Shown: positions 7,000-54,443 of the stretch, piece after piece
How positions within the stretch are numbered: the stretch's first letter is position 1
Layout: the number at the start of each line of letters is the position of its first letter
Source: Amphiscolops sp. MND2022
Taxonomy: Eukaryota
Assembly (NCBI GenBank): GCA_964187785.1
Contig: OZ076421.1
Span: 23,374,001-23,438,000 of the forward strand
Length of the DNA stretch: 64,000 bases
Reading direction: 5' to 3'
Program-made: the position numbers and the translations under genes
Notes under the pieces: generated by a model
Seen by the model: only the letters and a program-made list of their open reading frames with translations
Databases searched by the model: none
Told to the model about the DNA's origin: nothing

Positions 7000-9900
7000 G
7001 CGACGTATAGGTCTGGCACTGTCAGTCCGCAGAACAAAATGTCATCAATACCAAGAAAACCTTCCATGTCTGTGGCTTGCAATGAGACTAGATGCCAATA
7101 CCTACCCGATTTGTTTATTTTATATGCTTTGTGAAAACTGGGATAGTTCGCATTTTCACAAAAAAAACAAGAGAATATACTACAATACGAAAACTGATAC
7201 TAATGGGAGATTTTATTGCCCGCAACGGTAACATGATTGACTATATTGATAACTATGACGAAGATAAACACCCGCCACCAAGATTTAAGAAAAACTTGAA
7301 AATAAATACGAAACAAAAACTCCTGATCGATCTGAGTAAAACCGCAGAAAGGGTGCTGGTAAATGGATTGGTAAGTATTCGGAAGCGATTACAAATGCAT
7401 AACGCATTAGGCGGGAAGTACAATAGACCAACTCATTGTTGATTACGATGGCTTCAATAAAAGTGAGCTATCAGAACTTGAATTTGATCCATGCTGGTCC
7501 AATCTTCACTGTCCCAAGGCTATGGAACTCAAAATCTATAACATGTTCCGATAGAGATTTATGAAATGAACCAGAAGAAGTGAAGACGGAATTTACTAGT
7601 GCAAGAAAGGTTCTATGAGGAAATTAACGCATGAGGTCTGATTGCACGTGAAACAATGGTAGATAATGGGGTAAAAACCCCGAATACTCTAAATGAAATT
7701 ACCAGTACTCTGGAGAAACCATGTGATAGCGCAAGTAGAGCAGGTGCCTTAGAGAAAGTAAGAAGAAAACTACTTTTAGCTCTACCAACGGTTGGTTCGA
7801 TAGAGACTGTCAATCGGAACGCTCGATATTCCGAAATAGACCAAGCTGGTCTAACAAGAAGAACGATAGGAAAGAATGGAAAGCAGCCTTCAGAGAAAAT
7901 GAAAACTTTCTTAGGGAGAAAACGAAAAATTGGATGGTTGATAAAAAATTGAATTTAAGAAGGAAACAGTGTGAAGACATTGGGTTTTTTTTCAAGGAAC
8001 TGGATAGAAAAGACGAAAAAATGCCTACTGAAATACCAAAAATGTATAATCACTTTAAAATTCACAATGTCCACGAATGTTTGCACTCAAATCAAGTATT
8101 TCGATGTGAATGGAATTGTTGGATTGAACAAAGTCTTCACAGAGAAAGAGGTGATCTAACGTATTCAAAAATTAAGAACAGTGAATAAGCTCGTCTCCAT
8201 AATATTTATCAATTATTTTCTCAAGTATCTTGTTGACCCCTTATAAAAGCAATAACGAAATGCTTCGATCGAATACTAGTAGCGATTGAAAAACTTGACG
8301 AAAGGGCTATCTCTATCTACCAACCCATTGTCAAAAATGTAACAGAAATGATCCAAACAACTACATTGGGATCTCGTTTTGGAGCTATCTATGTAAACTG
8401 CGCTTCGCAGTGAAAGGATACAAAATGATTCAGAAAAAAGGCATTTGTTGGGCAGAGAACAAGCGGGTTTTAGAAACAACATGGATTGTATTGACCATTT
8501 TTTTGTTTTAACATCACTGTTCTCACTGTACCTGGCCAGTAGGAAGAAGTCGTTTCTGACTTTCATCGATTATGAGAAAATTTGACAGTGTTGACTGCGG
8601 CTTATTTCGGAAAAATTGCGGTCAGTCAACATGGAAGAGAGTTAGAAGTAAAAATAAACCTATATCAAAAAACAAAAGCATGTGTTATTGTCAATGGTGA
8701 GCTATCAGGCCTATTCAACTGTCGAATGGCGGAACGACAAAGGGGACACAATGTCACTTCTTCTGTTTAAAATTTACGTTAATGATTTTAAGTTTATTAT
8801 TAGTCAGAAGGTCAGTGAACTACAGTCAGAAACTAGTAAAAATACGGATGTCTCAGATCTCGAATTGTGATTAAACTGTTTCGCTCGTCTATATGCAGAA
8901 TATACCGTGCTTATGAGCGGAAGCGAGATCGATTTGCAAAAAGCACTCGACGCAACAGAACAGTACTGTATGGAACTCAATATAAAAAGTACTGTTGCTC
9001 AGACAAACTTTATGATATGTTCACCTGGGAAAATTAGAAAATATTCCGATGACTTTGTGTATGGTACACCAATTGAACGTGTTTTTGGGAATTGTTGTCA
9101 AGTTTAACATCACTTTTCAAACAACCAAAAAAACAATGTCGATGAAGCTAAAACGGCATGCAATAAACAAGCAGTCTATTCGGGTAAAATTGACATTAGA
9201 AGTAGAAGCAAAACTACATCTTTTCGACACATTGATCAAGCGTATCTTATTGTATGATGTGAGGTGTGGGGCAATGAAAATGTCGAAAAATTGAAAACTT
9301 CCAAAAAAAATTTTAGAGAAAGATATCAAGAACTAAGTAAGGTGCCCGTAAAGCAATGATTTACGGTGAATGAGAACAAACATAGTTGAAGATTTCAATC
9401 TGGCAAAGAATGGCATCCTACTGGAAAAAATGTAATATGAAAAATCAAAAACTTCCAAATCTGATGCTCAAATGGTTAAACTTGATGAAATATGAAAAAA
9501 AGTGGCCGCAAGGTGTAAAAACATACTGATAAACTGCGACTTACCAACGATTGAGAATTACGTCAACTACGATAATGACAATGAGTCCAACAAATAAATT
9601 AAAGGATACTGTGAGGATATTGCTAACCAATCCTGGCAAACTATGACGCGCGCAACGCCCATATGTGAATGATAACAAAAAGCCGAATTAGAAATGTTTC
9701 TTCGTAAAATGAACTTCAAAGAAAGGATAGGACTAACTCATTTCAGGACCAACGGTAAAAGACAGGATCCTAGGGAACACAAGCAATACATGACCGCTCG
9801 GCCCAAATGAATGTAAAGCCGACGAATACCACCTACTACGTAAGAGTTTTAGAAAATGATTTAAAAAGTTGCTGTCAAGATCAAAATGCAACTAAAAAGA
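7000..9900 (+). mobile_element. Decayed CR1/L2-type LINE (APE endonuclease + RT remnants)
   Basis: ILMGDFIAR (~7200, endonuclease), QAGFRNNMDCIDHFF...FIDYEK (~8460-8580, RT) and LYAEYTVL (~8890, degenerate YADD). Many stops and frameshifts. Confidence 0.75.
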
Positions 9901-41830: not shown

Positions 41831-42578
41831 ATTTTATCAGCCAAAACGAAATCAATATGGCAAACGAGCCTCTCAAAGTTCTACAACCACTTCTGGAAAG
41901 TTCACGAGAAATCGATAAATAACGGCGTATTACAAAACCGCACTTTCTCCAGTCACCAAAATTACCGCGATGGAGAAAATTTTTCCTTCTTGAGAATTTT
42001 GAGTGATGGAGAGTTTCAACGGACAGACCCTAGGTCAGCTAACATACTCGATAAAGTAGTTGAAGTAGTCCAACTTGAACGATAAAGTTGAAGGGAGTTC
42101 CGTTCTCGACATCCTTCAGAACAAACATCCCAAGCTTTGAAAAGCCGACTTTGAACACATTGCGATACCAGATGACTGAACATTAAAATATCATGTTACA
42201 AACTTTGACTGTTTAGGCTAAGCGATGTCGAACAGGAGCAAAGACCTAGCGGGAACGGAGATCGCGAAGCGATCGTAGTGGGAGCTGGTCTTTGCGACGG
42301 TGAGGGCGAGCGTGCATACACCGGATATGCCCCACATTTCAGTTTTTAGATTTCTTTAGATCCTAGGCGGTGGAGCTCTCAGGATATGTGTGAAGGCTGT
42401 TCAGCTTACACCAGATATGCCCGACATGAAAAGTCGAACTTGGTGTCTCGGAACTATTCCATTCGAACTTATTGCACTAGTTCTAATTCGAACTTAGTAA
42501 ATCGAACTTATTGCCCGAAGCCGGTTACGGGCGTACAAACATTACAGTAGAACTGTTCGAGGAACTCAGAATTAGCAA

Positions 42579-44188
42579 AGTTCGCGCGGATGTCCCTCTG
42601 TTGTTTGCGAGAATGCTTTGCTTGTAGCTTGCGAAGTAGTCTCGCCCTTGGCTTTTGAATGGCGGACCACCTGACCACTATCAGGAAATAAGACTATGAT
42701 TTTTGCTGAAGAGACTAGAACAAAACTGAGTTGAAGCTTTAAAGCTTTAATAAACTAAAAGATTATTGCGTTTTGCGTGTTCTTGCAGTTCAAGACAGTT
42801 CACAGCTCTCATCATGGTGGGTGAGGTTTTGACAATGAAGCACAATGTTTAGAATTCATGTACCAGTCAATGGACATAAATGACACAGTATGATGCAATT
42901 GAAGTTATGTAACTGCACGCTTATTGGCTAACAAATATGTTGTATGCATTGGCAAACACCTTGTTCAATTCGGTCTATACAACAAATAGGCAACGTAGAA
43001 CATGTATTCAGCAAAAGCAATGAGAATGAAAGGGGTTGGGAAAGGTCAATCAAACAAAGATAGCATTCAGCGCGTTGTCACAGTGAGCTTGTATGAACTC
43101 AAAAATTCGTTTTCACCTAAAAGTTATAAATCACAATATCAACCACAAATATAGATGAAGGAAGAGTGAAGTTTGCTATTTTAGAGACGAATGAGCTTGA
43201 GGCTGCATTAAGCCTGACAATGGAGTTAGAGTCGGGGAGGCTTCCTTTGACTCGGGTGAGGGAGGGGGGCATAACAGATTTCTTGAGGAAACAGAACATC
43301 CCCATTATTATATGTCGCATTCCTGTGCTGCGTTACACCAACGGAGCAGCGAGGAGGGTTGCTGTTTGTTTCCGTAATGAGAAGCAACTTCTGGCAACAT
43401 TCAAGGGCACACGGATGAAGGACGCTCCTTTCGATGGACTTCCAGAGGCTCCCTGGCGACATGGGGCCCTATACCCAGACCCGCTAGGAGAGCAGTATGT
43501 GGAGGTTGTCCAAGATATTGGCGGCACTCCATCGAGCACGTCTCACTCCTTGCAAGTGGTGATTGGGAATAGAGTGGTTGGCACACAGACTCCAACCCGG
43601 GAGGAAGCATTGTCAGCCAGCAGGAAAGGGGGAGGAAGATGTGGTTCTTCACCACTCGCACACGCGAGGTGAAGACCCTCTGCAGAAAACGCATCGTGCC
43701 TCCGTTGGAAAAGCATCGTTCCCTGCCTAGTACGCTCTGGGATGACTTGCTGCAATTCCGGGCATATATAGCGTACTGCATCCAGGAGCCCGGTGATGTG
43801 GTCCTGTTTTCCTCCTTGACTGCACACTGTGTATTGACGGGACAAGGGCCAGCGGTTTTGATGACCACCACACTGAAGGTCGAGGAGGCCGAGGAAGAGC
43901 TCGTTCAGCACCTGGGTGCGCAATATCAGCCTCAAGGAGTGAGGCGTGCGATAAGACAGCCGGGTTCGCGGGGAAGAAGTAGGGGGAAAAGACGGTCCAG
44001 GTTTTCATGAGGTAAGGAGCGCTTTCAAGCTTTAAAAATATACAAAGTACAAAAACACATATCTTCAAAGGTATTTCACTTGATGTTGTTTCAAAATGCA
44101 CAGCTCGTGGTCTGCAAACGAATTCGATAAATCTTTCCACTTTTCTGGGGAATCCTTTTGAAATTTATTCAGATTAATATATGCGACA
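42579..44188 (-). repeat. 3' LTR (1610 bp)
   Basis: Direct repeat of 51106-52722 at a few percent divergence by eye. Starts TGTCGC on the minus strand right after the PPT; the terminal base appears substituted (…GAACT instead of …GAACA). Confidence 0.9.
43130..44010 (+). pseudogene. JmjC-domain (Fe(II)/2OG dioxygenase, histone-demethylase-like) ORF inside the 3' LTR, antisense to gag-pol
   Basis: Joining ORFs 43166-43672 and 43639-44010 across a 1-G loss at ~43523 gives HVSLLASGDWE*SGWHTDSNPGGSIVSQQERGRKMWFF...YCIQEPGDVVLFSSLTAHCVLT. HxD is at 43582-43590, Lys at 43636 and distal His at 43825. One in-frame TAG at 43570; start codon uncertain (first in-frame ATG 43220). Confidence 0.8.
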
Positions 44189-44201
44189 TACCGCCCGCCT
44201 T
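44189..44201 (-). promoter_or_regulatory. Polypurine tract
   Basis: AAGGCGGGCGGTA on the minus strand immediately precedes the 3' LTR. Confidence 0.7.
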
Positions 44202-44253
44202 GATTTTGCGTGGCGCAAATCAAAAAAAAGTTAGATGACGTACAAATATAGCA

Positions 44254-45442
44254 TCAAAGGAGCTGACAATGAGCGAGCATTAACAAACAACTGATTACAG
44301 GGTGTTTCATTAAAGATTGAGGAGGATATGTATCGATAGGTAGTTTTTTCAACTTGTGAACAGAGCGATTGTATATTCCAGTTGGAGTTTTCACCTTGAC
44401 TACTCTGACGGCACTATCGGGTCCACGGTAGACATAATGGACGCGACCAATTGGCCATTGTAGAATTGCTGAATTGTCATCGGTGATGGAAACTAAGTCG
44501 CCCACTTTCAAATTGCTTGTTTCTCGTCTCCATTTGCTTCTTTCCTGTAATGTGGTTACGTATTTTTTGGTCCATCTGTTCCAGAAATGCAACAGAATGT
44601 TCTGAATGTGATACCATCGTTTTGAGGGACCGCAATTGTCCACGGCATGGGTTTGGTCCAATAAAAAAGACGGTAACACGTCTAGTTTGTGTCCAATTGA
44701 AAGATGTGCTGGTGTAAGTGGTTCAACTTCATTGGGATCATCGGACATTACACTGATTGGGCGCGAGTTTAGCACTGCCTCGATCTGACAAAAAAGAGTT
44801 GTTAACTCGTCAAATGTCAGGACACTGTTGCCCATTGTTCTGCGTAAGTGTTTCTTCGCACATTTCACTGCCGCTTCCCATAAACCTCCGAAATGAGGAG
44901 CCATTGGGGGTATGAAGTTCCATCGAATGCCAAGAGCACTAGATTGGTAATGCAGCGAGTTGTCATGCTTGTTGGATAGAACCTCTTGCAATTGTTGAAT
45001 CTGAACAAAGTTGGTTCCGTTGTCAGAGAATACTTGACTGGGACAACCTCTTCGAGATATAAAAACGTCGTATTGCTGCCATACACCCCAAAGTGGTCAT
45101 ATCGGATACACACTCAATGTGGACAGCTTTACTGGCAAAACAAACAAACAAAGCCATGTAGGCTTTGTCCTGACTTCTGGCCTTGCTGCTTGGTTTGCAT
45201 AGAAAAGGTCCTGCAAAGTCTAGCCCCACGTTTTCAAAGGCTCTGTTTGGGACGTCAATGCGTTCCTTAGGGAGGTCTCCCATAAGCGGCCCACTCAGCT
45301 TGGCTGTGAACATGCTGCATTTCACGCACTGCTGAAGTTCTTGTCTCACAACACTATGGTTGTTGGGTATCCAGAAATTTGATCTGATCTGAGCCATCAC
45401 TTGATTGATGTAGCGTATCCAGATGAGCTTTCTTAATGACAA
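44254..45442 (-). pseudogene. BEL/Pao integrase (frameshifted)
   Basis: CVKC zinc motif, FENVGLDFAGP, WNFIPPMAPHFGGLWEAAVKCAK, EAVLNSRPI and C-terminal WPIGRVHYVYRGPDSAVRVVKVKT. Confidence 0.9.
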
Positions 45443-45822
45443 GCGTAGCGTATCTGCTTTCCCTCGGACTTAATCGCTGATATTGGGCCTCGTCTGGTAA
45501 ATTGGCGTGGGCAAGACGACCACCAACACAAAGGACTCCCTGGAATAAAAATGGGTACAGTTTTAGGATTTTTTGCTTGTCGATTTTACCTAAGGCAAGG
45601 TCTCAAAGGTTTTTATTTCGTCGGAATAAACCTTCTTTTGTTCTTGCCGTAGAAGAATCATCATCGCCTCCGTCATTTCTTCAGGTGAGATGGTTCCTAA
45701 TGAACCCTTGGTGCCTCGGTTACGAATGCGTTGTGTAAATCGTTTGACAAACGCCACTAACCTGAGAAGCCTCGACAGAGAACTGAATAGCGAAAGGTCC
45801 AAAGATGTCTATCGAACGTCTA

Positions 45823-46850
45823 TTAACGTCTATCGAACCTGCAATCGTAGCTGGTAACACACCGCATGTCTTTTGTGAGCTAGAAGCACCCAGAGTTATG
45901 ATGGTTGACGGTGTTTTTTGCACTTTCAAAATTAGTGCCTTCGCTTTTGCCTCTGTAATGAAGCTAACTTGTGATCCGGAATCTAACAAGGCTCGTAGAT
46001 GTACCCTTTCACCTGATTTATTGTGGATGGCTACCATTGCCGTTGGAAGTAGAGCACCGGCGTTTAGAGATCAAGACCCGCAATGCCCAGTCAAGACAGA
46101 AAACTTGTCTATCGGCTTGCTGACCTGCTGAACCGGCAGACTGAATTGTTTTGTTGGCAGAAGTTGACACACTCGCTATTGTCTTGTTTGACCCGTCATG
46201 CAAAGTTGTCTCAGGCTTTGGTCGGTGAAGTAGAGTGTGGTGTTTGGCCTTGCACTTCCTGCAGCTGAATTTAGAACCACATTCGCTGACACTGTGCCCA
46301 GTCTGCAAACAATTGAAACAAGCACGCTTCTTCTTCACCAAGTCGTACTTCTGGGACGTTGACATCTTCTTGAATTCTGGACACGCATGGAGTTTATGTT
46401 CAACGACACATATCTCACTACACGTCATTGAAGCTGCGTAAAACTGATGCCGGGGCTCACGTTGATCGCTCATCTTGTTGGCTTGGGGAATCACTTTGAT
46501 TGCACAACACTCTGATGCCCTGCTTCTTTCATCAAGGAACTTGGATAAATCGTCCCAGCGAAAAACATTTTTGCCAGGATGTTTGTGCTGCCATTGCTTT
46601 CGTGATTTTGCATCGAGCTTGTTGGCGATGCAACAAACTAATACAGCACTCCATTGATTCACTGGTTGACCCAAAGCTTCTAATGTCCTCAGATGCTCAT
46701 TGGTGGTTTCGTGTAGTTTCCTGAGGCCAGACACAGATTCTACCTTCATTGACGACTGAGACCAAATGGCTTGCAAATGAGCTCGCACTATACTTCGTGT
46801 GTTGTCGTATCTGTCCTTTAGTAGCTGCCACGCAAGGGGATAATTGGCAT
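45823..46850 (-). repeat. Duplicated gag-C/protease-N block (copy of 49472-50500)
   Basis: Offset 3649 bp; four substitutions counted in ~1030 bp. Flanked by a second duplicated block (45370-45810 matching 46850-47290, offset 1480). Confidence 0.9.
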
Positions 46851-47069
46851 CCAGAATTTTGATCTGATCTGAGCCATCACTTGATTGATGTAGCGTATCC
46901 AGATGAGCTTTCTTAATGACAAGCGTAGCGTATCTGCTTTCCCTCGGACTTAATCGCTGATATTGGGCCTCGTCTGGTAAATTGGCGTGGGCAAGACGAC
47001 CACCAACACAAAGGACTCCCTGGAATAAAAATGGGTACAGTTTTAGGATTTTTTGCTTGTCGATTTTAC

Positions 47070-49686
47070 CTAAGGCAAGGTCTCAAAGGTTTTTATTTCG
47101 TCGGAATAAACCTTCTTTTGTTCTTGCCGTAGAAGAATCATCATCGCCTCCGTCATTTCTTCAGGTGAGATGGTTCCTAATGAACCCTTGGTGCCTCGGT
47201 TACGAATGCGTTGTGTAAATCGTTTGACAAACGCCACTAACCTGAGAAGCCTCGACAGAGAACTGAATAGCGAAAGGTCAAAGATGTCACGTGCATAATT
47301 GTCAACCTTTGTAACTGCAAGAGACACTGCTGGCACTGTTCTTACCACTCTTGCTAAAGGAGTCCTTTTAGCCGCTCTAGGGTGTAGGATCTGTCGCTCT
47401 GGCCTTTTTACTTCATGTTCAGTGAAGTTTAGTTTCGGTTGTGACGGTAGCACTCCACTACGTAACCAAGTTGGTCCCTTCCACCAAATTTCCAGGCTCT
47501 TGAGTGCACTTAGCTCAACACCACGAGACGCTGCATCAGCTGGATTGTTCTCTGTGGGTACGTGTTGCCAATGAACACGGTCATTGCGTTGTATTTCGGC
47601 AACTCTATTCGCGACAAACGTTTTCCAGTTACTTGGTTCTTGAGAAAGCCAACAGAGAACAATTGTGGAATCACTCCAGCCCGTTGTTGCACGTATGTTG
47701 ACAGAAATTCGCTCAAGTGCCTGAATGACTATTGACACCAGACGGGATCCGAGAAGCACAGCGCACAATTCAAAGCGAGGAATAGATTGTGTTTTCAGTG
47801 GAGAGACTTTGCATTTTGCCACAAGTAGATTGGAATTCCTCTCACCTCGATTATTGCTCGAGACCACGTATACACAGGCTGCATATGCCTTCTCTGAGGC
47901 ATCACAGAAGACATGTAACTCGAAAGGCTCTTGCTGTTCTTTGCTCAGAACAAAGCGTTGCAATTTGATCTCTTTTAAATTGTGTAAATTCTTCCGCCAG
48001 GTCCGATAGCTCACATCAATCTCGGTTGGCAGTTTTTGATCCCAGTCGACATTTGTTTGCCAGGCCCTTTGCATCATGCTCTTCAGAAGCATTGTCACCG
48101 GAGACAACCAGCCCAGAGGATCAAAAGTTTTGGCAATGTCACCAAGCATTTGTCTTTTTGTCATTCCATCGTCATTGATGTCATCAGAGATGTGAGCTAC
48201 CTCAAACGAGAACAAATCATCAAAAGGATTCCACGTGACGCCCAGTGTTTTTATGGTAGGAGTTGGGTCAAGAAATTCAGGTTTTCATTTGCTTCTCTAT
48301 ACTCTGCGGGAAGTGCTATGACAAAAGAAGGAACATTGCTGGTTCATTTTTTCAAATCAAATTGAACTCGTTCAAGAGTTTGTATCAAATCCTTGAGAAG
48401 CTGCTCAGCTTCCTCAATGCTACTAGCTCCTGTCAAAATAAAATGCCGCCCACATAGAAATCACGTAGAATTGCTTCTTTGGCCGCCTTTGGTACACCAT
48501 CAAGCTGGGCTGCTTCCCTCAAGCATCTGATTGAGTGATAAGAGGAACTTGCTACCCCGTAAGTCACACGCGTCGTCTTCACTGAATCGCCAGACGAGTC
48601 GCATGAAGTCCCTGTCTCTGGTGTCTAGACCAACCTGTCGGTACATCTTGGCAACGTCTGCCGAAAACGCAACCTTGAAGAATCGGAATCGTATCAAAAT
48701 GCTGAATAGGTCGTCTTGCAGTTTCGGGCCCACTATCAAGCAGTCATTTAGCGAAAGACCTGTTTTGTCTTGGCACTAGCATCAAAGACCACCCGCAGCT
48801 TCGTAGTTGTACTGGCATCTCTTAATACACAATGATAGGGAATGTAGTAGTGGTTTACATTGTCCAACTCTCCATCAGGTACCTTCTCTAGATGACCCAG
48901 TTCCAAAAATTCAATAATAAAATCAGAATACCTGACTTTCAGCAAGTTGACACGTTTCAGTTTGTTTTCCAGATTGATGAATCGTATCACTGCAGAAGCT
49001 CGGCTCTGACCCAGCAAGTGACCGTCTGCCTTGAAAGGTAACCTCACATAGAACCTTCCGGCTGAGTCTCTTGTGGTTGTTGCATCAAAATGTTCTTCGC
49101 AATGAGCCTCTTCCATCGTGCAATGCTTCTTTTCTGGTACACTCTCTAGTTCCCAGAATCTCGCTAGTAACTTGTTTGACTCCCCGTCGCTTGCCACTGT
49201 CACATGATGAGTCGAAATTACACCACTCGTCTCCAATATTGGACCCGAAACAATCCAGCCCAGGAGTGACTCTCGAAGGATGAGACCATTGTCCTTGATT
49301 CAATTGTCCAGCATTAGATCTTCAATGATGTCGGCTCCCAGAAGCATGTCGATTTTGCCAGGTTCACTGAAGTTGGGATCAGCCAGCTTCAGATGATCTA
49401 CGTGACGCATCTGGGAGATATCCACAATTGCATTAGGCAGTGAACCAGTTATCTTCGGGATCACGTGAAAGTTAACGTCTATCGAACCTGCAATCGTAGC
49501 TGGTAACACACCGCATGTCTTTTGTGAGCTAGAAGCACCCAGAGTTATGATGGTTGACGGTGTTTTTTGCACTTTCAAAATTAGTGCCTTCGCTTTTGCC
49601 TCTGTAATGAAGCTAACTTGTGATCCGGAATCTAACAAGGCTCGTAGATGTACCCTTTCACCTGATTTATTGTGGATGGCTACCAT
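47070..49686 (-). pseudogene. BEL/Pao protease-RT-RNase H (stops, frameshifts; YVDD degenerated to YVGG)
   Basis: RALLDSGSQVSFITE; FWELE; TKLRVVFDAS; VGPKLQDDL; RVTYG after a short deletion; DFYVGG at ~48450; RNase H ORF 47070-48215. Confidence 0.9.
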
Positions 49687-51085
49687 TGCCGTTGGAAGTA
49701 GAGCACCGGCGTTTAGAGATCAAGACCCGCAATGCCCAGTCAAGACAGAAAACTTGTCTATCGGCTTGCTGACCTGCTGAACCGGCAGACTGAATTGTTT
49801 TGTTGGCAGAAGTTGACACACTCGCTATTGTCTTGTTTGACCCGTCATGCAAAGTTGTCGCAGGCTTTGGTCGGTGAAGTAGAGTGTGGTGTTTGGCCTT
49901 GCACTTCCTGCAGCTGAATTTAGAACCACATTCGCTGACACTGTGCCCAGTCTGCAAACAATTGAAACAAGCACGCTTCTTCTTCACCAAGTCGTACTTC
50001 TGGGACGTTGACATCTTCTTGAATTCTGGACACGCATGGAGTTTATGTTCAACGACACATATCTCACTACACGTCATTGAAGCTGCGTAAAACTGATGCC
50101 GGGGCTCACGTTGATCGCTCATCTTGTTGGCTTGGGGAATCACTTTGATTGCACAACACTCTGATGCCCTGCTTCTTTCATCAAGGAACTTGGATAAATC
50201 GTCCCAGCGAAAAACATTTTTGCCAGGATGTTTGTGCTGCCATTGCTTTCGTGATTTTGCATCGAGCTTGTTGGCGATGCAAAAAACTAATACAGCACTC
50301 CATTGATTCACTGGTTGACCCAAAACTTCTAATGTCCTCAGATGCTCATTGGTGGTTTCGTGTAGTTTCCTGAGGCCAGACACAGATTCTACCTTCATTG
50401 ACGACTGAGACCAAATGGCTTGCAAATGAGCGCGCACTATACTTCGTGTGTTGTCGTATCTGTCCTTTAGTAGCTGCCACGCAAGGGGATAATTGGCATC
50501 TGTGATTCTAAGTGAGCTTATTAGTTTCGCAGCAACACCCTTTATGCAGGCTTTCAGTTAATTTAGCCTCTCAGAGTCAGATAAAAGACTGCTTGAGCCC
50601 ACTGCTGCTTGGAAGAGATCGCTGAAAGATACCCAATCCGTATAGGCCCCAGTGAAAGTTGGCATTTGGAGCTTTGGCAGACGCATGCGTCCTGTAGTCG
50701 GCAGGCTTGAAGAGGTTGATGCGGTTGCTGCAAGTCCCGCCTTCAACTGGGTCTTGATATTGTCAATTAGTGCACTGAGTCGAGCCATGGCGATGTTCAT
50801 CCTAGTCTCGTAATCTGAGAATGCCTCCTGTTCTTGTGCCAGCTTGGCATCGTCTTCAATTTTGAGCTCGATCTCTGCGTCCCATCTGAGAATGGTTTTG
50901 TACTTGTTCTGCAACGTAGAAAACAGCGCCTCTGCTTCACAGAGCTTCTCACTGGTGACTGCGTGATCTGCTACGAGGTCATCAACTCTGGTCTCGTATT
51001 TTGTGAAAGCTGCTTTGTGTCCTGCCCTCACACGCACTAGTTTGCGAACATCTTCCTCCCAGATGTTTGTTCCTGCCTCAGCCAT
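49667..51085 (-). pseudogene. BEL/Pao gag (premature stop at 50558)
   Basis: ATG at 51085 just after the PBS. RLPKLQMPTFTGAYTDWVSFSDLF (Pao gag motif), ERLN*LKAC, and CFNCLQTGHSVSEC/CRKCKAKHHTLLH knuckles. Confidence 0.85.
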
Positions 51086-51088
51086 ATG

Positions 51089-51103
51089 CGGGTCGGCGGA
51101 CCA
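51089..51103 (-). promoter_or_regulatory. Primer binding site, probably tRNA-Tyr
   Basis: TGGTCCGCCGACCC begins 2 nt after the 5' LTR. The complementary tRNA end ...UCGGCGG-A-CCA implies C1-G72/A73, the eukaryotic tRNA-Tyr identity set. Confidence 0.7.
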
Positions 51104-51105
51104 AA

Positions 51106-52722
51106 TGTTCGCGCGGATGTCCCTCTGTTGTTTGCGAGAATGCTTTGCTTGTAGCTTGCGAAGTAGTTTCGCCCTTGGTTCTTGAATGGCGGACCACCTA
51201 ACCACTATCAGGAAGTAAGACTATGATTTTTGCTGAAGAGACTCGAACAAAACTGTTGTTGAAGCTTTAGAGCTTTATTAAACTAAAAGATTATTGCGTT
51301 TTGCGTGTTCTTGCAGTTCAAGACAGTTCACAGCTCTCATCATGGTGGGTGAGGTTTTGACAATGAAGCACAATGTTTAGAATTCATGTACCAGTCAATG
51401 GACATAAATGGCACAGTATGATGCAATTGAAGTTATGTAACCTCACGCTTATTGGCTAACAAATATGTTGTATGCATTGGCAAACACCTTGTTCAATTCG
51501 GTCTATACAACAAATAGGCAACGTAGAACATGTATTCAGCAAAAGCAATGAGAATGAAAGGGGTTGGGAAAGGTCAATCAAACAAAGATAGCATTCAGCG
51601 CGTTGTCACAGTGAGCTTGTATGAACTCAAAAGTTCGTTTTCACCTAAAAGTTATAAATCACAATATCAACCACAAATATAGATGAAGAAAGAGTAAAGT
51701 TTGCTATTTTAGAGATGAAAGAGCTTGAGGCTGCATTAAGCCTGACAATGGAGTTAGAGTCGGGGAGGCTTCCTTTGACTCGGGTGAGGGAGGGGGCATA
51801 ACAGATTTCTTCAGGAAACAGAACATCCCCATTATTATACGTCGCAATCCTGTGCTGCGTTACACCAACGGAGCAGCGAGGAGGGTTGCTGTTTGTTTCC
51901 GTAATGAGAAGCAACTTCTGGCAACATTCAAGGGCACACGGATGAAGGACGCTGCTTTCGATGGTCTTCCAGAGGCTCCCTGGCGACATGGGGCCCTATA
52001 CCCAGACCCGCTAGGAGAGCAGTATGTGGAGGTTGTCCAAGATATTGGCGGGCACTCCATCGAGCACGTCTCACTCCTTGCAAGTGGTGATTGGGCATAG
52101 AGTGGTTGGCACACAGACTCCAACCCGGGAGGAAGCATTGTCAGCCAGCAGGAAAGGGGGAGGAAGTTGTGGTTTTTCACCACTCGCACACGCGAGGTGA
52201 AGACCCTCTGCAGAAAACTCATCGTGCCTCCGTTGGAAAAGCATCGTTCCCTGCCTAGTACGCTCCGGGATGACTTGCTGCAATTCCGGGCACATATAGC
52301 GTACTGCATCCAGAAGCCCGGTGATGTGGTCCGGCGGTGTTTTCCTCCTTGACTGCACACTGTGTATTGACGAGACCAGGGCCAGCGGTTTTGATGACCA
52401 CCACACTGAAGGTCGAGGAGGCCGAGGAAGAGCTCGTTCAGCACCTGGGTGCGCAATATCAGCCTCAAGGAGTGAGGCGTGCGATAAGACAGCCGGGATC
52501 GCGGGGAAGAAGTAGGGGGAAAAGACGGTCCAGGTTTTCATGAGGTAAGGGAGCGCTTTCAAGCTTTAAAAATATACAAAGTACAAAAACACATATCTTC
52601 AAAAGTATTTCACTTGATGTTGTTTCAAAATGCACAGCTCGTGGTCTGCAAACGAATTCGATAAATCTTTCCACTTTTCTGGGGAATCCTTTTGAAATTT
52701 ATTCAGATTAATATATGCGACA
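51106..52722 (-). repeat. 5' LTR (1617 bp)
   Basis: TGTCGC...GCGAACA termini on the minus strand, followed by the PBS. A minus-strand AATAAA lies ~170 nt from the LTR end. Confidence 0.9.
51650..52543 (+). pseudogene. Second JmjC-domain ORF copy inside the 5' LTR
   Basis: Same protein with different lesions: 1-G loss in the G-run at 51792-51796, 5-nt insertion at 52333-52337 and the same TAG at 52098. HTD at 52110 and the distal AHCV motif are retained. Confidence 0.8.
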
Positions 52723-52782
52723 TACCGGAATAAATATGTCAACTCCCGGAAATATCTTAATGTGGGGCAAATCCGGTGTATG

Positions 52783-53339
52783 GGTAAATGGTCACTTGGC
52801 TTAATGCCATTTGGCTTAAAGTCATTTGGCTTAATACAATTGGTCACTTGGCTTAATTTTTTTAAGCTAAGTGTCTCGGTTATTGGTCACTTGGCTTAAA
52901 GTCATTTGACTTAAAACCACTTAGTTGAAAACACGTGACAGATTTTGTCGAATTTATCTTTATAACGTAGTCAGCGTATTATTATAACATGTCTTATCAA
53001 GTATCCCTCGGATATGTCCCCATTTCCTCTAGTGCCCTGCGGCCCCTTGGGGCCGCTTATATTCCCATCTTGCTAAGCGAGGTCGAACAGGAGCAAAGAC
53101 CTAGCGGGAACGAAGATCGCGAAGCGATCGTAGTGGGAGCTGGTCTTTGCGACGGTGAGGGCGAGCGTGCATACACCGCATATGCCCCACATTATGATAT
53201 TTCCGGGAGTTGACATATTCATTCCTTGAGTTGGAATGGAGTTGGCTTAATTTTGTGGTCACTTGGCCTAAAATTTTTAAGCCAAATGACTCGATGAAAA
53301 AATTAAGCCAAATGGTATTAAGCCAAGTGACTGGTAACC
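52783..53339. mobile_element. MITE with GGT-starting TIRs, ttggcttaa arrays and 8 bp TSD (Merlin/hAT-like), nested in another repeat
   Basis: Ends are GGTAAATGGTCACTTGGCTTAA and TTAAGCCAAGTGACTGGTAACC; GGTGTATG is duplicated on both sides. Confidence 0.75.
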
Positions 53340-54443
53340 GGTGTATGCACGCTCGCCCTCACCGTCACAAAGACCAGCTCCCACTACGATCGCTTCGCGA
53401 TCTCCGTTTCCGCTAGGTCTTTGCTCCTGTTCGACCTCGCTTAGCAAGATGGGAACATAAGCGGCCCCAAGGGGCCGCGGGCACTAGATGATTTGGGGAA
53501 ATATCAGAGATACGTTTTATACTTACGGCGGTTTATTCAAAATTCGAACACAGTGATTCGAACTTGTTCCGGTTTTTGGAAAATTCGAACATAGTCCATT
53601 CGAAATAAAAATTCGAACTTATGCGTTCGAACTTATTACCGTGCCCTAAAATTTCGATCCGAGTTGTTTCGATCCCATTCAAAAAATTTGGTATGTCGAC
53701 CTGAGGACTAACTCTGATTTTCGATTTTGTTCCTTCGACCTACTTCCGCCCACCCCATCAGAGAAAATATAGATTGGTCAGAACAAAGCCAGAGTACCTC
53801 CATGGACACTAAAATGCCCATAGTAGGCAGTAAAAGAACTCATCATCATCATCTCCGTATGATATTGCGTATTTGGTTTTCTTCAAAAGTTCGCAAGTGT
53901 TTGCGAAGCACGGCTTCGCCTCTGTGGTAAAATGATGTCACCATTGTTTTGTAGGTTGCCAGGCTACTGGGATAACTAATGACGGATTTTAGTAGTCACA
54001 CTAATTTTGTTTTCCTTGAATTTTTCACTGTAGATCATGGCTGTGTGCCCTCTACTCCCTATAACATGGTAACCTACATGGCAGTAAATTAATGACGAAG
54101 GCGAGAGTGCCTTCATACAGCAGGTTTCGTATTGTTACATTTCAGGGTTATATCTGCCAAAAATGATGACTTCTGGTTGTAAGACCGGACCTCCTGTGTC
54201 CTTTTAGGTCGGCCATCATCAAGACTAGCTGCGGGACTAGTCTCGGCACGTCGCTTCGGTTCTGATTTTAGGGCTCGAGGTCTTAATATTGCTGACTGTT
54301 ATAATTAATATTTTTAAGATCGTTTTTCCATTTTTGATTGGAATTGCGACGCATTGGAAGCTTCCGGATCTGAGACGTTATGTGGAATTATTTTTGAAAA
54401 TCTAGCTATGTATCACCCTTATCAACTTGTTTTCAGTTGCAAT

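What the first reader, a model, noticed from the sequence alone, without database searches (positions are those of the whole stretch)
42579..52722. BEL/Pao retrotransposon whose LTRs each carry an antisense JmjC (histone-demethylase-like) gene
Seen: both ~1.6 kb LTRs contain a ~260-290 codon frame on the strand opposite gag-pol. Combining the two copies gives ...EHVSLLASGDW(E/A)*SGWHTDSNPGGSIVSQQERGRK(M/L)WFF...YCIQ(E/K)PGDVVLFSSLTAHCVLT..., ending in the basic tail RRAIRQPGSRGRSRGKRRSRFS. Established: HxD...GxKxW...QxPG(D/E)xVxxP...HxV is the JmjC cupin signature (cf. KDM2/PHF8 YCLMSxxxxYTDFHxD and JMJD6 [20 protein letters not shown]...[20 protein letters not shown]). The Fe(II) triad and the 2OG-binding Lys are all present. 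Mobile-element dioxygenases are known (TET/JBP with fungal KDZ transposons, AlkB in RNA viruses), as are anti-silencing proteins (plant VANC), but I know of no JmjC gene embedded in an LTR. Inference: this may be a self-encoded chromatin anti-silencing factor. Its location in the LTR would duplicate it at every transposition and leave it behind in solo LTRs.
Basis: partly seen in the sequence, partly recalled or inferred. Interest (0 to 1): 0.92.

Follow-up and report, generated by a model that had tools for sequence, protein, structure and literature searches.

The report
Retrotransposon LTRs carrying a JmjC gene
A family of animal jumping genes (BEL/Pao retrotransposons) carries, backwards inside each of its long end-repeats, a conserved gene for a small iron-dependent enzyme that looks like a histone demethylase. 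The two copies in this window are broken, but many intact, selected copies exist elsewhere, so the element may erase the chromatin marks that silence it.

Summary
The window has a BEL/Pao LTR retrotransposon on the minus strand, with LTRs at 42579-44188 and 51106-52722 (about 98% identical). Each LTR has a plus-strand JmjC-like frame. Both window copies are pseudogenes: they share a TAG, have different frameshifts, and the left one has no ATG. The element's interior is also rearranged.

The gene is real in the family. The LTR stretch that holds the gene recurs in at least 40 scored copies in this 1.07 Gb genome. About 17 of the 28 other copies fetched keep the ~293-codon frame open. dN/dS is 0.46-0.48, the same as the element's own integrase (0.41). 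In a second family, dS is 0.28 with dN/dS 0.10.

A family profile hits PHF8, KDM7 and JMJD6 in the PDB. An AlphaFold model (pLDDT 88) matches PHF2, PHF8, KDM7A and KDM2A at Z 15-16.5. The HxD...H triad, the Lys and the Thr/Ser are conserved.

Several BEL/Pao lineages here, one Ty3/gypsy-like lineage, and marine metagenome contigs carry diverged homologues (24-51% identical to this family), always antisense where an element was recognised. No homologue carries a name, and I found no publication.

Expression and enzyme activity are untested, so anti-silencing remains an inference. The scan reported the same gene family in at least 8 other windows of this genome.

The parts
42579..44188 (-). 3' LTR of the element (1610 bp). 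Similarity to the other LTR extends to 42577-44193.
51106..52722 (-). 5' LTR of the element (1617 bp, TG...CA)
43187..44010 (+). JmjC gene remnant in the 3' LTR. It has ACG at the start position, a frameshift near 43523 and an in-frame TAG at 43570-43572. Its HTD, K and H motifs lie in the piece 43573-44007.
   Evidence: Homologous open frames in other copies.
51715..52543 (+). JmjC gene remnant in the 5' LTR. ATG is present. It has a frameshift near 51792, TAG at 52098-52100, and a 5-nt insertion at 52333-52337 that shifts the frame.
43125..43130 (+). TATAAA 62 nt upstream of the JmjC start. The same motif lies at 51653-51658 in the other LTR. It is kept in 93% of 30 copies. Candidate promoter element of the antisense gene (inferred).
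44254..51205 (-). Degraded gag-pol: gag DUF1759, aspartic protease, Pao peptidase A17, integrase, DUF5641. It is split into many ORFs and rearranged: 45823-46851 duplicates 49472-50500, and 45366-45809 duplicates 46846-47288.
51087..51103 (-). Primer-binding-site-like TGGTCCGCCGACCCGCA, 2 nt after the 5' LTR
   Evidence: sequence read directly
44189..44199 (-). Polypurine-tract-like GGCGGGCGGTA abutting the 3' LTR
   Evidence: sequence read directly

Best explanation
The window holds an old, rearranged, non-functional copy of a BEL/Pao LTR retrotransposon family whose LTR carries an accessory gene, probably within U3.

The gene is intronless and lies antisense to gag-pol. It encodes a 274-aa protein that is essentially a bare JmjC Fe(II)/2-oxoglutarate oxygenase domain. 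Its fold is closest to the KDM7/PHF8/PHF2 and KDM2 lysine demethylases, and it ends in a disordered arginine/lysine-rich tail.

Shown:
- The gene is part of the LTR in the whole family.
- It is kept under purifying selection as strong as that on the element's integrase.
- Diverged versions sit antisense in other BEL/Pao lineages and in a Ty3/gypsy-like lineage.

Follows from the mechanism of LTR formation (the assignment to U3 itself is inferred): because the LTR is rebuilt at both ends during reverse transcription, every new insertion carries two gene copies, and a solo LTR keeps one.

Inferred:
- The gene is transcribed from its own TATA-containing promoter, back-to-back with the LTR's sense promoter.
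- The antisense orientation lets it keep its own signals without truncating the genomic RNA.
- The protein enters the nucleus through its basic tail and removes repressive lysine methylation (H3K9me-type marks) or a similar mark, to the element's benefit. It would act in trans on all copies.

I put about 0.9 on 'selected, element-borne JmjC oxygenase gene' and about 0.35-0.4 on the specific anti-silencing demethylase mechanism.
For: Family-wide LTR location:
- At least 40 scored copies (185 candidates) of the 1-kb LTR stretch that holds the gene, at 92-97% identity. Many lie in pairs about 7.07 kb apart.
- The full LTR is conserved in 30 fetched copies.

Open frames:
- About 17 of the 28 other copies fetched keep a frame of roughly 290 codons or more.
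- 46 of the 69 best near-full-length matches genome-wide have no internal stop.
- Only the JmjC frame is open in every lineage. The other five frames hold 2-28 stops.

Selection:
- dN/dS 0.48 (bootstrap 0.34-0.70) in the JmjC frame, against 1.08-1.49 in the two shifted sense frames.
- The integrase C-terminus of the same elements gives 0.41, and JmjC gives 0.46 on the same loci.
- Family B: dN 0.028, dS 0.28, dN/dS 0.10.

JmjC identity:
- Pfam JmjC hits 16 of 23 family members.
- Family profile against PDB sequences: PHF8 E 5.5e-7, ceKDM7A 2.9e-6, KDM7A 5e-5, JMJD6 6e-4. The HxD, K and H columns align.
- AF2 model: pLDDT 88.4, pTM 0.85.
- The Foldseek top 50 are all JmjC enzymes.
- VIA-align: PHF2 Z 16.5, PHF8 16.1, ceKDM7A 15.6, KDM2A 15.2, over residues 1-257.
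- Residue conservation: H 42/43, D/E 39/43, K 38/44, second H 37/44, T/S at -3 37/47.

Other lineages and sources:
- for this genome.
- An intact BEL/Pao gag-pol lies antisense to JmjC in metagenome contigs, one of them a TARA Oceans scaffold with JmjC on both sides.

Candidate promoter: TATAAA 62 nt upstream of the ATG, kept in 93% of copies.
Against: - No transcript evidence. No RNA run holds the sequence, and the four runs that hold it behave as DNA unitigs.
- No canonical AATAAA lies on the plus strand between the stop codon and the LTR end.
- No reader domain (PHD, CXXC, Tudor) that would target histone tails.
- The fold is also close to protein hydroxylases (JMJD5, JMJD6, FIH at Z 13-14), so the substrate is open.
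- Within family A the copies are young. Openness alone is only mildly above neutral expectation (20 observed against 15.9 expected without an in-frame stop).
- Both copies in this window are dead.
- Single-sequence Pfam scores sit at the threshold (24.4 against 24; the window pieces score 22.8 and 20.0).
Confidence: 0.55

Rival explanations
1. The protein is a JmjC hydroxylase acting on a non-histone substrate, in the manner of JMJD6, JMJD5, JMJD7, FIH or TYW5. The substrate could be a host restriction, splicing or translation factor, the element's own Gag or integrase, or an RNA-linked target. It would help replication without touching chromatin marks.
For: The Foldseek E-value ranking puts JMJD5, JMJD6, TYW5 and JMJD7 at the top. 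JMJD6 is a significant sequence-profile hit (E 6e-4). The protein has no chromatin reader domain. An RG/RS-like basic tail would also suit RNA or RNP binding.
Against: Structure alignment by Z-score and aligned length favours PHF2, PHF8, KDM7 and KDM2 (Z 15-16.5, 225-232 residues) over JMJD5 and FIH (Z 13-13.8). The best sequence-profile hits are PHF8 and KDM7. Neither result fixes the substrate.
Confidence: 0.25
2. The fold is kept for binding rather than catalysis. The protein would be a decoy or adaptor that occupies methylated tails or a host silencing factor, as PHF2-like or otherwise inactive JmjC proteins may do.
For: Very small size and no accessory domains. Some family members have substitutions at the K or second H column.
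Against: The complete Fe(II) triad, the 2OG Lys and the Thr/Ser are kept in most members, down to 23-28% identity. A pure binder would not need them.
Confidence: 0.08
3. The gene is neutral or host-serving cargo: a captured host fragment that hitch-hikes in the LTR, or a self-limiting or host-domesticated factor, without benefit to the element.
For: Copies in family A are young, and open frames are only mildly over-represented. No expression data exist.
Against: dN/dS equals that of integrase, and is 0.10 at dS 0.28 in family B. The gene is retained, always antisense, in several BEL/Pao lineages with only 36-61% pol identity and in a gypsy-like lineage. Marine metagenome contigs show the same arrangement. 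No close host paralogue turned up: all 143 scored genome matches scored far above what a distant host JmjC would, though only a handful of loci were inspected for their context.
Confidence: 0.07

Closest known systems
KDM7/PHF8/PHF2 and KDM2 (JHDM1) JmjC histone lysine demethylases
   Same: Best sequence-profile and structural matches. The double-stranded beta-helix core is shared. The HxD...H triad, the Lys about 18 residues after the first His and the Thr/Ser three residues before it all align.
   Different: Only 10-14% identity. The protein is 274 aa with no PHD, CXXC, F-box or JHD module. It is encoded by a retrotransposon, not a host gene. Substrate is unknown.
MMTV sag (superantigen ORF in the U3 of a retroviral LTR; from my own knowledge)
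   Same: A protein-coding gene that lies inside the LTR and is therefore present twice per provirus.
   Different: sag is in sense orientation, belongs to a mammalian retrovirus and is not an enzyme. Here the gene is antisense, has its own candidate promoter, and sits in a BEL/Pao element.
Additional or antisense ORFs of LTR retrotransposons (plants, PMC7264820 and PMC11963269; bdelloid rotifers, PMC5408684) and HTLV-1 HBZ (own knowledge)
   Same: An accessory ORF near the 3' end of the element, often antisense, sometimes shared between unrelated retroelement types.
   Different: Those ORFs lie between pol and the 3' LTR and mostly have no recognisable enzymatic fold. I found none reported as JmjC (titles and abstracts only).
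Fe/2OG dioxygenases carried by mobile elements: AlkB m6A demethylase domain in orchid Ty3/gypsy elements (PMC9289625); TET/JBP in KDZ DNA transposons
   Same: A 2OG-dependent oxygenase recruited by a transposable element, plausibly to remove a repressive or restrictive modification.
   Different: AlkB is fused in frame in the sense polyprotein and acts on RNA. TET/JBP acts on DNA bases and rides DNA transposons. Here there is a separate antisense gene of the JmjC clade.
VANC anti-silencing proteins of Arabidopsis VANDAL transposons (own knowledge)
   Same: The functional analogy proposed: an element-encoded factor that removes epigenetic silencing from its own family.
   Different: No sequence or fold relation. 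VANC is a DNA-binding protein of a DNA transposon. The function here is untested.

Membership tests
JmjC Fe(II)/2OG oxygenases (Pfam PF02373, cupin clan) | Double-stranded beta-helix (cupin) fold of the JmjC type | tested here: met
   AF2 model pLDDT 88.4. The Foldseek PDB top 50 are all JmjC enzymes at E 4e-8 to 9e-7. VIA-align gives Z 13-16.5 over residues 1-257. AFDB and Atlas hits are all JmjC or cupin-like.
JmjC Fe(II)/2OG oxygenases (Pfam PF02373, cupin clan) | HxD/E...H metal-binding triad | tested here: met
   H133, D135 and H214 of the 274-aa protein align with the PHF8 FHID...HAVL columns. Conservation is 42/43, 39/43 and 37/44 in the family alignment. The window copies read HTD...AHCVLT.
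JmjC Fe(II)/2OG oxygenases (Pfam PF02373, cupin clan) | 2-oxoglutarate-binding Lys (and Thr/Ser before the first His) | tested here: met
   K151 is kept in 38/44 and aligns with the PHF8 GEKIF Lys. T/S at -3 is kept in 37/47. The role of these residues in PHF8 and KDM2A is from my own knowledge.
JmjC Fe(II)/2OG oxygenases (Pfam PF02373, cupin clan) | Score above Pfam's gathering threshold | tested here: inconclusive
   Cut-off is 24 bits. One open copy scores 24.4, other open copies 18.4-21.2, the window pieces 22.8 and 20.0, and a distant member (P0047) 29.3. 16 of 23 members hit at E<0.01.
JmjC Fe(II)/2OG oxygenases (Pfam PF02373, cupin clan) | Fe(II)/2OG-dependent catalysis | not testable with these tools
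   Needs recombinant protein.
KDM2/KDM7 (JHDM1/PHF) histone demethylase subfamily | Chromatin reader or targeting module (PHD, CXXC, F-box) and the JHD helical domain | tested here: not met
   Pfam finds only JmjC in the 274-293 aa protein. The protein ends about 60 residues after the second His. So it works like, but is not a member of, this subfamily.
KDM2/KDM7 (JHDM1/PHF) histone demethylase subfamily | Methyl-lysine demethylation of H3K9/K27/K36/H4K20 | not testable with these tools
   There is only fold proximity.
BEL/Pao LTR retrotransposons (Belpaoviridae) | gag (DUF1759), Pao peptidase A17, and integrase with a DUF5641 tail, between LTRs, with PBS and PPT | tested here: met
   LTRs. 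PBS-like and PPT-like sequences. No target-site duplication was found for this copy.
LTR-embedded gene (as opposed to an internal accessory ORF) | The whole ORF lies inside both LTRs, and does so in other copies of the family | tested here: met
   The ORF occupies LTR positions 613-1437 of 1615. It is present in both window LTRs and in many LTR pairs elsewhere. Family B has 1879-bp LTRs, both holding the ORF. Related short-LTR lineages keep the gene internal.
Transposon-encoded anti-silencing factors (functional class, e.g. VANC) | Loss of repressive marks at the element's own copies when the factor is expressed | not testable with these tools
   No RNA or chromatin data are available for this organism.

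The most novel reading that the evidence does not exclude
A clade of animal LTR retrotransposons encodes its own minimal histone lysine demethylase. In some lineages the gene has moved into U3, so that every insertion and every solo LTR becomes a promoter-equipped demethylase gene. The family would then collectively erase piRNA/H3K9me-type silencing in trans. This would be the first retroelement-borne chromatin eraser, and a self-amplifying counter-defence.
Probability: 0.35. Interest if true: 0.9.

Novelty: new variant of a known kind. Interest (0 to 1): 0.8.

Why it matters
Accessory genes of retrotransposons are rare and mostly of unknown fold. This one has a clear enzymatic identity, from the class that includes the erasers of the very marks hosts use to silence transposons.

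If it is active, it gives a directly testable case of a retroelement manipulating chromatin, or a host protein, by catalysis.

It also shows a simple route by which cargo can be doubled and left behind in solo LTRs: a shift of the LTR boundary that brings the gene into the LTR.

Finally, it defines a protein family of at least 74 clusters (at 50% identity) that has no name in any source searched.

Tried and rejected
- Single-sequence PDB search of the window piece and of an open copy gave nothing useful.
- The first AF2 run, with an 8-sequence alignment, failed (pLDDT 31). A 55-sequence alignment was needed.
- RNA evidence: no RNA run holds the LTR. The four holders, laid on a copy with unique flanks, are DNA unitigs. 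Unique flank depth is 16-83, and summed depth over the repeat is thousands. They say nothing about expression.
The selection tests therefore rest on 30 LTRs of family A and a few copies of the other families.
- No target-site duplication could be found for the window copy.
- The context of the 'E' clade of the gene (L042/L049, L033, L054) could not be assigned to any element type.
- Pairs within families C and D are too similar for dN/dS.
- The short contigs L031 and L032 show no poly(A), so they are not evidence of mRNA.
- Literature searches for JmjC or jumonji with LTR retrotransposon, Bel-Pao, transposon-encoded, antisense or additional ORF found no description.
- Rejected: chance ORF, one-off insertion, recent host-gene capture, and constraint from the opposite strand. 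The antisense frame whose third codon positions coincide with those of the JmjC frame shows low dN/dS (0.54) as expected, but it carries stops.


Full report
**1. What is in the window**

Direct repeats 42577-44193 and 51104-52727 are 97.4% identical over 1625 aligned columns.

Between the LTRs, on the minus strand, lie ORF fragments that hit these Pfam families:
- DUF1759 (BEL/Pao gag)
- aspartic protease
- Peptidase_A17 'Pao retrotransposon peptidase' (E 6e-52)
- Integrase_H2C2
- DUF5641 (E 3e-29)

A PBS-like TGGTCCGCCGACCCGCA follows the right LTR in the element's sense. A purine-rich tract abuts the left LTR. So the element runs right to left: the right LTR is the 5' LTR and the left LTR is the 3' LTR.

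The interior is rearranged. 45823-46851 repeats 49472-50500 at 99.6%, and 45366-45809 repeats 46846-47288. This explains why LTR spacing here is 8.53 kb, against about 7.07 kb in other copies. I found no target-site duplication.

**2. The antisense frame**

Both copies are pseudogenes.
- Left LTR: ACG where the family has its ATG (43187), a frameshift near 43523, and TAG at 43570-43572.
- Right LTR: ATG at 51715, a frameshift near 51792, the same TAG at 52098-52100, and a 5-nt insertion at 52333-52337.

The window pieces already hit Pfam JmjC at E 1.3e-4 and 9.8e-4, just under the gathering score.

**3. It belongs to the family, not to this copy**

The genome is 1.07 Gb in 1929 contigs. A 1-kb stretch of the LTR that holds the gene has 185 candidate and at least 40 scored matches at 92-97% identity. 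Many lie in pairs about 7.07 kb apart. The full 1.6-kb LTR is conserved in the 30 copies I fetched.

About 17 of the 28 copies fetched from elsewhere in the genome keep a frame of roughly 290 codons or more, 274 aa from the ATG. In them the window's TAG reads TGG. Their triad reads HID, where the window reads HTD.

A profile search of the genome gives 1302 candidates. Of the 69 best near-full-length matches, 46 have no internal stop.

**4. Selection**

| Comparison | dN/dS |
|---|---|
| JmjC frame, 30 LTRs of family A | 0.48 (bootstrap 0.34-0.70) |
| JmjC frame, one LTR per element | 0.46 |
| Two shifted sense frames | 1.49 and 1.08 |
| Integrase C-terminus, 15 elements | 0.41 (0.27-0.65) |
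| JmjC, same 15 loci | 0.46 |
| Family B, two subfamilies (dN 0.028, dS 0.28) | 0.10 |

- Only the antisense frame whose third codon positions coincide with those of the JmjC frame is also low (0.54), as expected. That frame carries stops.
- In family B the 0.10 rests on 42 synonymous against 17 non-synonymous differences.
- Codon-position diversity is 0.024, 0.032 and 0.048 for positions 1, 2 and 3.
- Openness alone is weak evidence in the young family A: 20 copies without an in-frame stop were observed, against 15.9 expected.
- In every lineage only the JmjC frame is free of stops.

**5. What the protein is**

Homologues:
- A word-indexed search found only unnamed ENA proteins, including a 51%-identical 278-aa one.
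- An exhaustive HMMER search found 74 cluster representatives at E<1e-3. All are 321 aa or shorter.
- None has a name or an NCBI/UniProt accession.
- They align end to end down to 23-28% identity. H133 and D135 are invariant among 23 full-length members.
- Across 55 sequences, first H is kept in 42/43, D/E in 39/43, K151 in 38/44, H214 in 37/44, and T/S at -3 in 37/47.

Sequence evidence for JmjC:
- Sixteen of 23 members hit Pfam JmjC. A distant member scores 29.3 bits.
- The family profile against PDB sequences finds PHF8 (E 5.5e-7), ceKDM7A, KDM7A, JMJD6 and PHF2, with the catalytic columns aligned.

Structural evidence:
- With the 55-sequence alignment AlphaFold2 gives pLDDT 88.4 and pTM 0.85. 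Residues 252-266 are disordered, within the basic tail.
- The Foldseek top 50 are all JmjC enzymes.
- VIA-align ranks PHF2 (Z 16.5, 225 residues, rmsd 3.4), PHF8 (16.1), ceKDM7A (15.6), KDM7A (15.4) and KDM2A (15.2) above JMJD5, UTY and FIH (13-14). The match covers model residues 1-257.
- AFDB clusters and the ESM Atlas agree, and show no close relative; identity is 18% or less.

So the protein is a bare JmjC catalytic domain plus a basic tail. It works like the KDM2/KDM7 group but lacks their reader modules.

**6. Wider distribution and architecture**

In this genome:

| Lineage | Element type | pol identity to window (aa) | LTR | Position of the JmjC gene |
|---|---|---|---|---|
| B (C11:43641000) | BEL/Pao | 48-62% | 1879 bp, 99.3% identical | Antisense in both LTRs; 27% identical to family A |
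| C (C2:22271000, C7:22260000) | BEL/Pao | 36-46% | about 296 bp | Antisense between integrase and the 3' LTR |
| C-like (C1:20480000) | BEL/Pao | 42-44% | 246 bp | Antisense between integrase and the 3' LTR |
| D (C4:78876000, C1:34799000) | Ty3/gypsy-like, 10.8 kb | not comparable | 422 bp | 300-aa antisense gene between pol and the 3' LTR |

- The pol of lineage D carries RVT_1, RT_RNaseH, Integrase_H2C2 and rve.

Outside this genome:
- One metagenome contig has an intact 1755-aa BEL/Pao gag-pol on one strand and the JmjC gene on the other, just past the 3' end of pol, with a truncated second copy at the contig's far end.
- A TARA Oceans scaffold has an intact 1763-aa gag-pol flanked on both sides by antisense JmjC copies. 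Its LTR repeat is 99.6% identical.
- Another contig has JmjC antisense next to a gypsy-type pol.

A maximum-likelihood tree puts the gypsy-borne genes in one strongly supported clade. The BEL/Pao-borne genes fall in several others.

In all BEL/Pao and gypsy-like elements examined the gene is tail-to-tail with pol. Long-LTR lineages have it inside the LTR and short-LTR lineages just outside. This fits a shift of the polypurine tract that moved the gene into U3 (inference).

**7. How it probably works**

Follows from how LTRs are made (the assignment to U3 is inferred from the position of sense-strand signals): a gene inside the LTR is copied to both ends at each insertion and survives in solo LTRs.

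Sequence-based observations:
- A TATAAA lies 62 nt upstream of the ATG and is kept in 93% of copies. A 4-codon uORF lies between the two.
- The sense-strand AATAAA nearest the U5 end lies about 170 nt from it.
- So the sense and antisense promoters would sit back to back in the roughly 600 nt between the ORF start and the U5 end (inference).

Antisense orientation lets the gene keep its own signals without truncating the genomic RNA. This is a general principle, from my own knowledge.

The substrate is unknown. Fold proximity to H3K9/K27/K36/H4K20 demethylases and the nuclear-type basic tail make removal of repressive lysine methylation the most likely function, at about 0.35-0.4. A JMJD6/JMJD5/FIH-like protein hydroxylase role is the main rival, at about 0.25.

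**8. What is missing**

There are no RNA data, no canonical plus-strand poly(A) signal inside the LTR, and no activity data.

**9. Novelty**

Seven full-text searches found no report of a JmjC gene in an LTR retrotransposon. The nearest precedents are:
- antisense or additional ORFs of plant and rotifer LTR elements
- an AlkB domain in orchid gypsy elements
- TET/JBP in KDZ transposons
- MMTV sag in U3
- VANC as a functional analogy

**10. Earlier scan findings**

After finishing my own tests I looked up the scan's notes. The same gene family was reported in at least 8 other windows of this genome, with concordant readings. These are not independent evidence, but they agree.

Noticed in passing
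window 42217-42338, 53072-53193, 53007-53509: A 122-nt repeat (97.5% identical) lies on both sides of the element. The right-hand copy sits in a roughly 500-bp palindrome (80% arms). It may be a MITE-like repeat unrelated to the retrotransposon.
   Followed up: no
window 44189-44193 and 52723-52727: The same 5 nt (CGGTA in the element's sense) precede both LTRs, so the host flank of the 5' LTR mimics the end of the polypurine tract. There is no target-site duplication. Possibly a recombinant or tandem origin of this copy.
   Followed up: partly
L037:2525-7909 (G000:C4:78878524-78883908): The 1795-aa pol of the gypsy-like, JmjC-carrying element has a weak Macro-domain hit at its C-terminus (residues 1667-1769, E 7e-4, below cut-off). 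This may be a second accessory domain.
   Followed up: no
L042/L049 (G000:C5:71074558-71075511), L033:7218-8108, L054:10001-10891: One clade of the JmjC family (318, 296 and 296 aa) has no recognisable LTR element around it. Neighbouring ORFs have no Pfam hits except weak GIY-YIG, PIF1-helicase and SET matches.
   Followed up: partly
L055:1679-1870 and 8841-9032: A 64-aa ORF follows the JmjC gene in both LTRs of the TARA Oceans BEL/Pao element. No function is known.
   Followed up: no
window 43154-43168 and 51682-51696: A 4-codon upstream ORF (ATG AAG GAA/AAA GAG then stop) sits between the TATAAA and the JmjC start. It is also present in the open copy L004.
   Followed up: no
L041:737-3016 (minus strand): A 759-aa open frame lies just outside the 3' LTR of a canonical copy of the family. 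Not examined.
   Followed up: no
L032:1-22: The Logan contig that carries homologue P0025 starts with an Illumina adapter sequence, so its 5' end is not biological.
   Followed up: no
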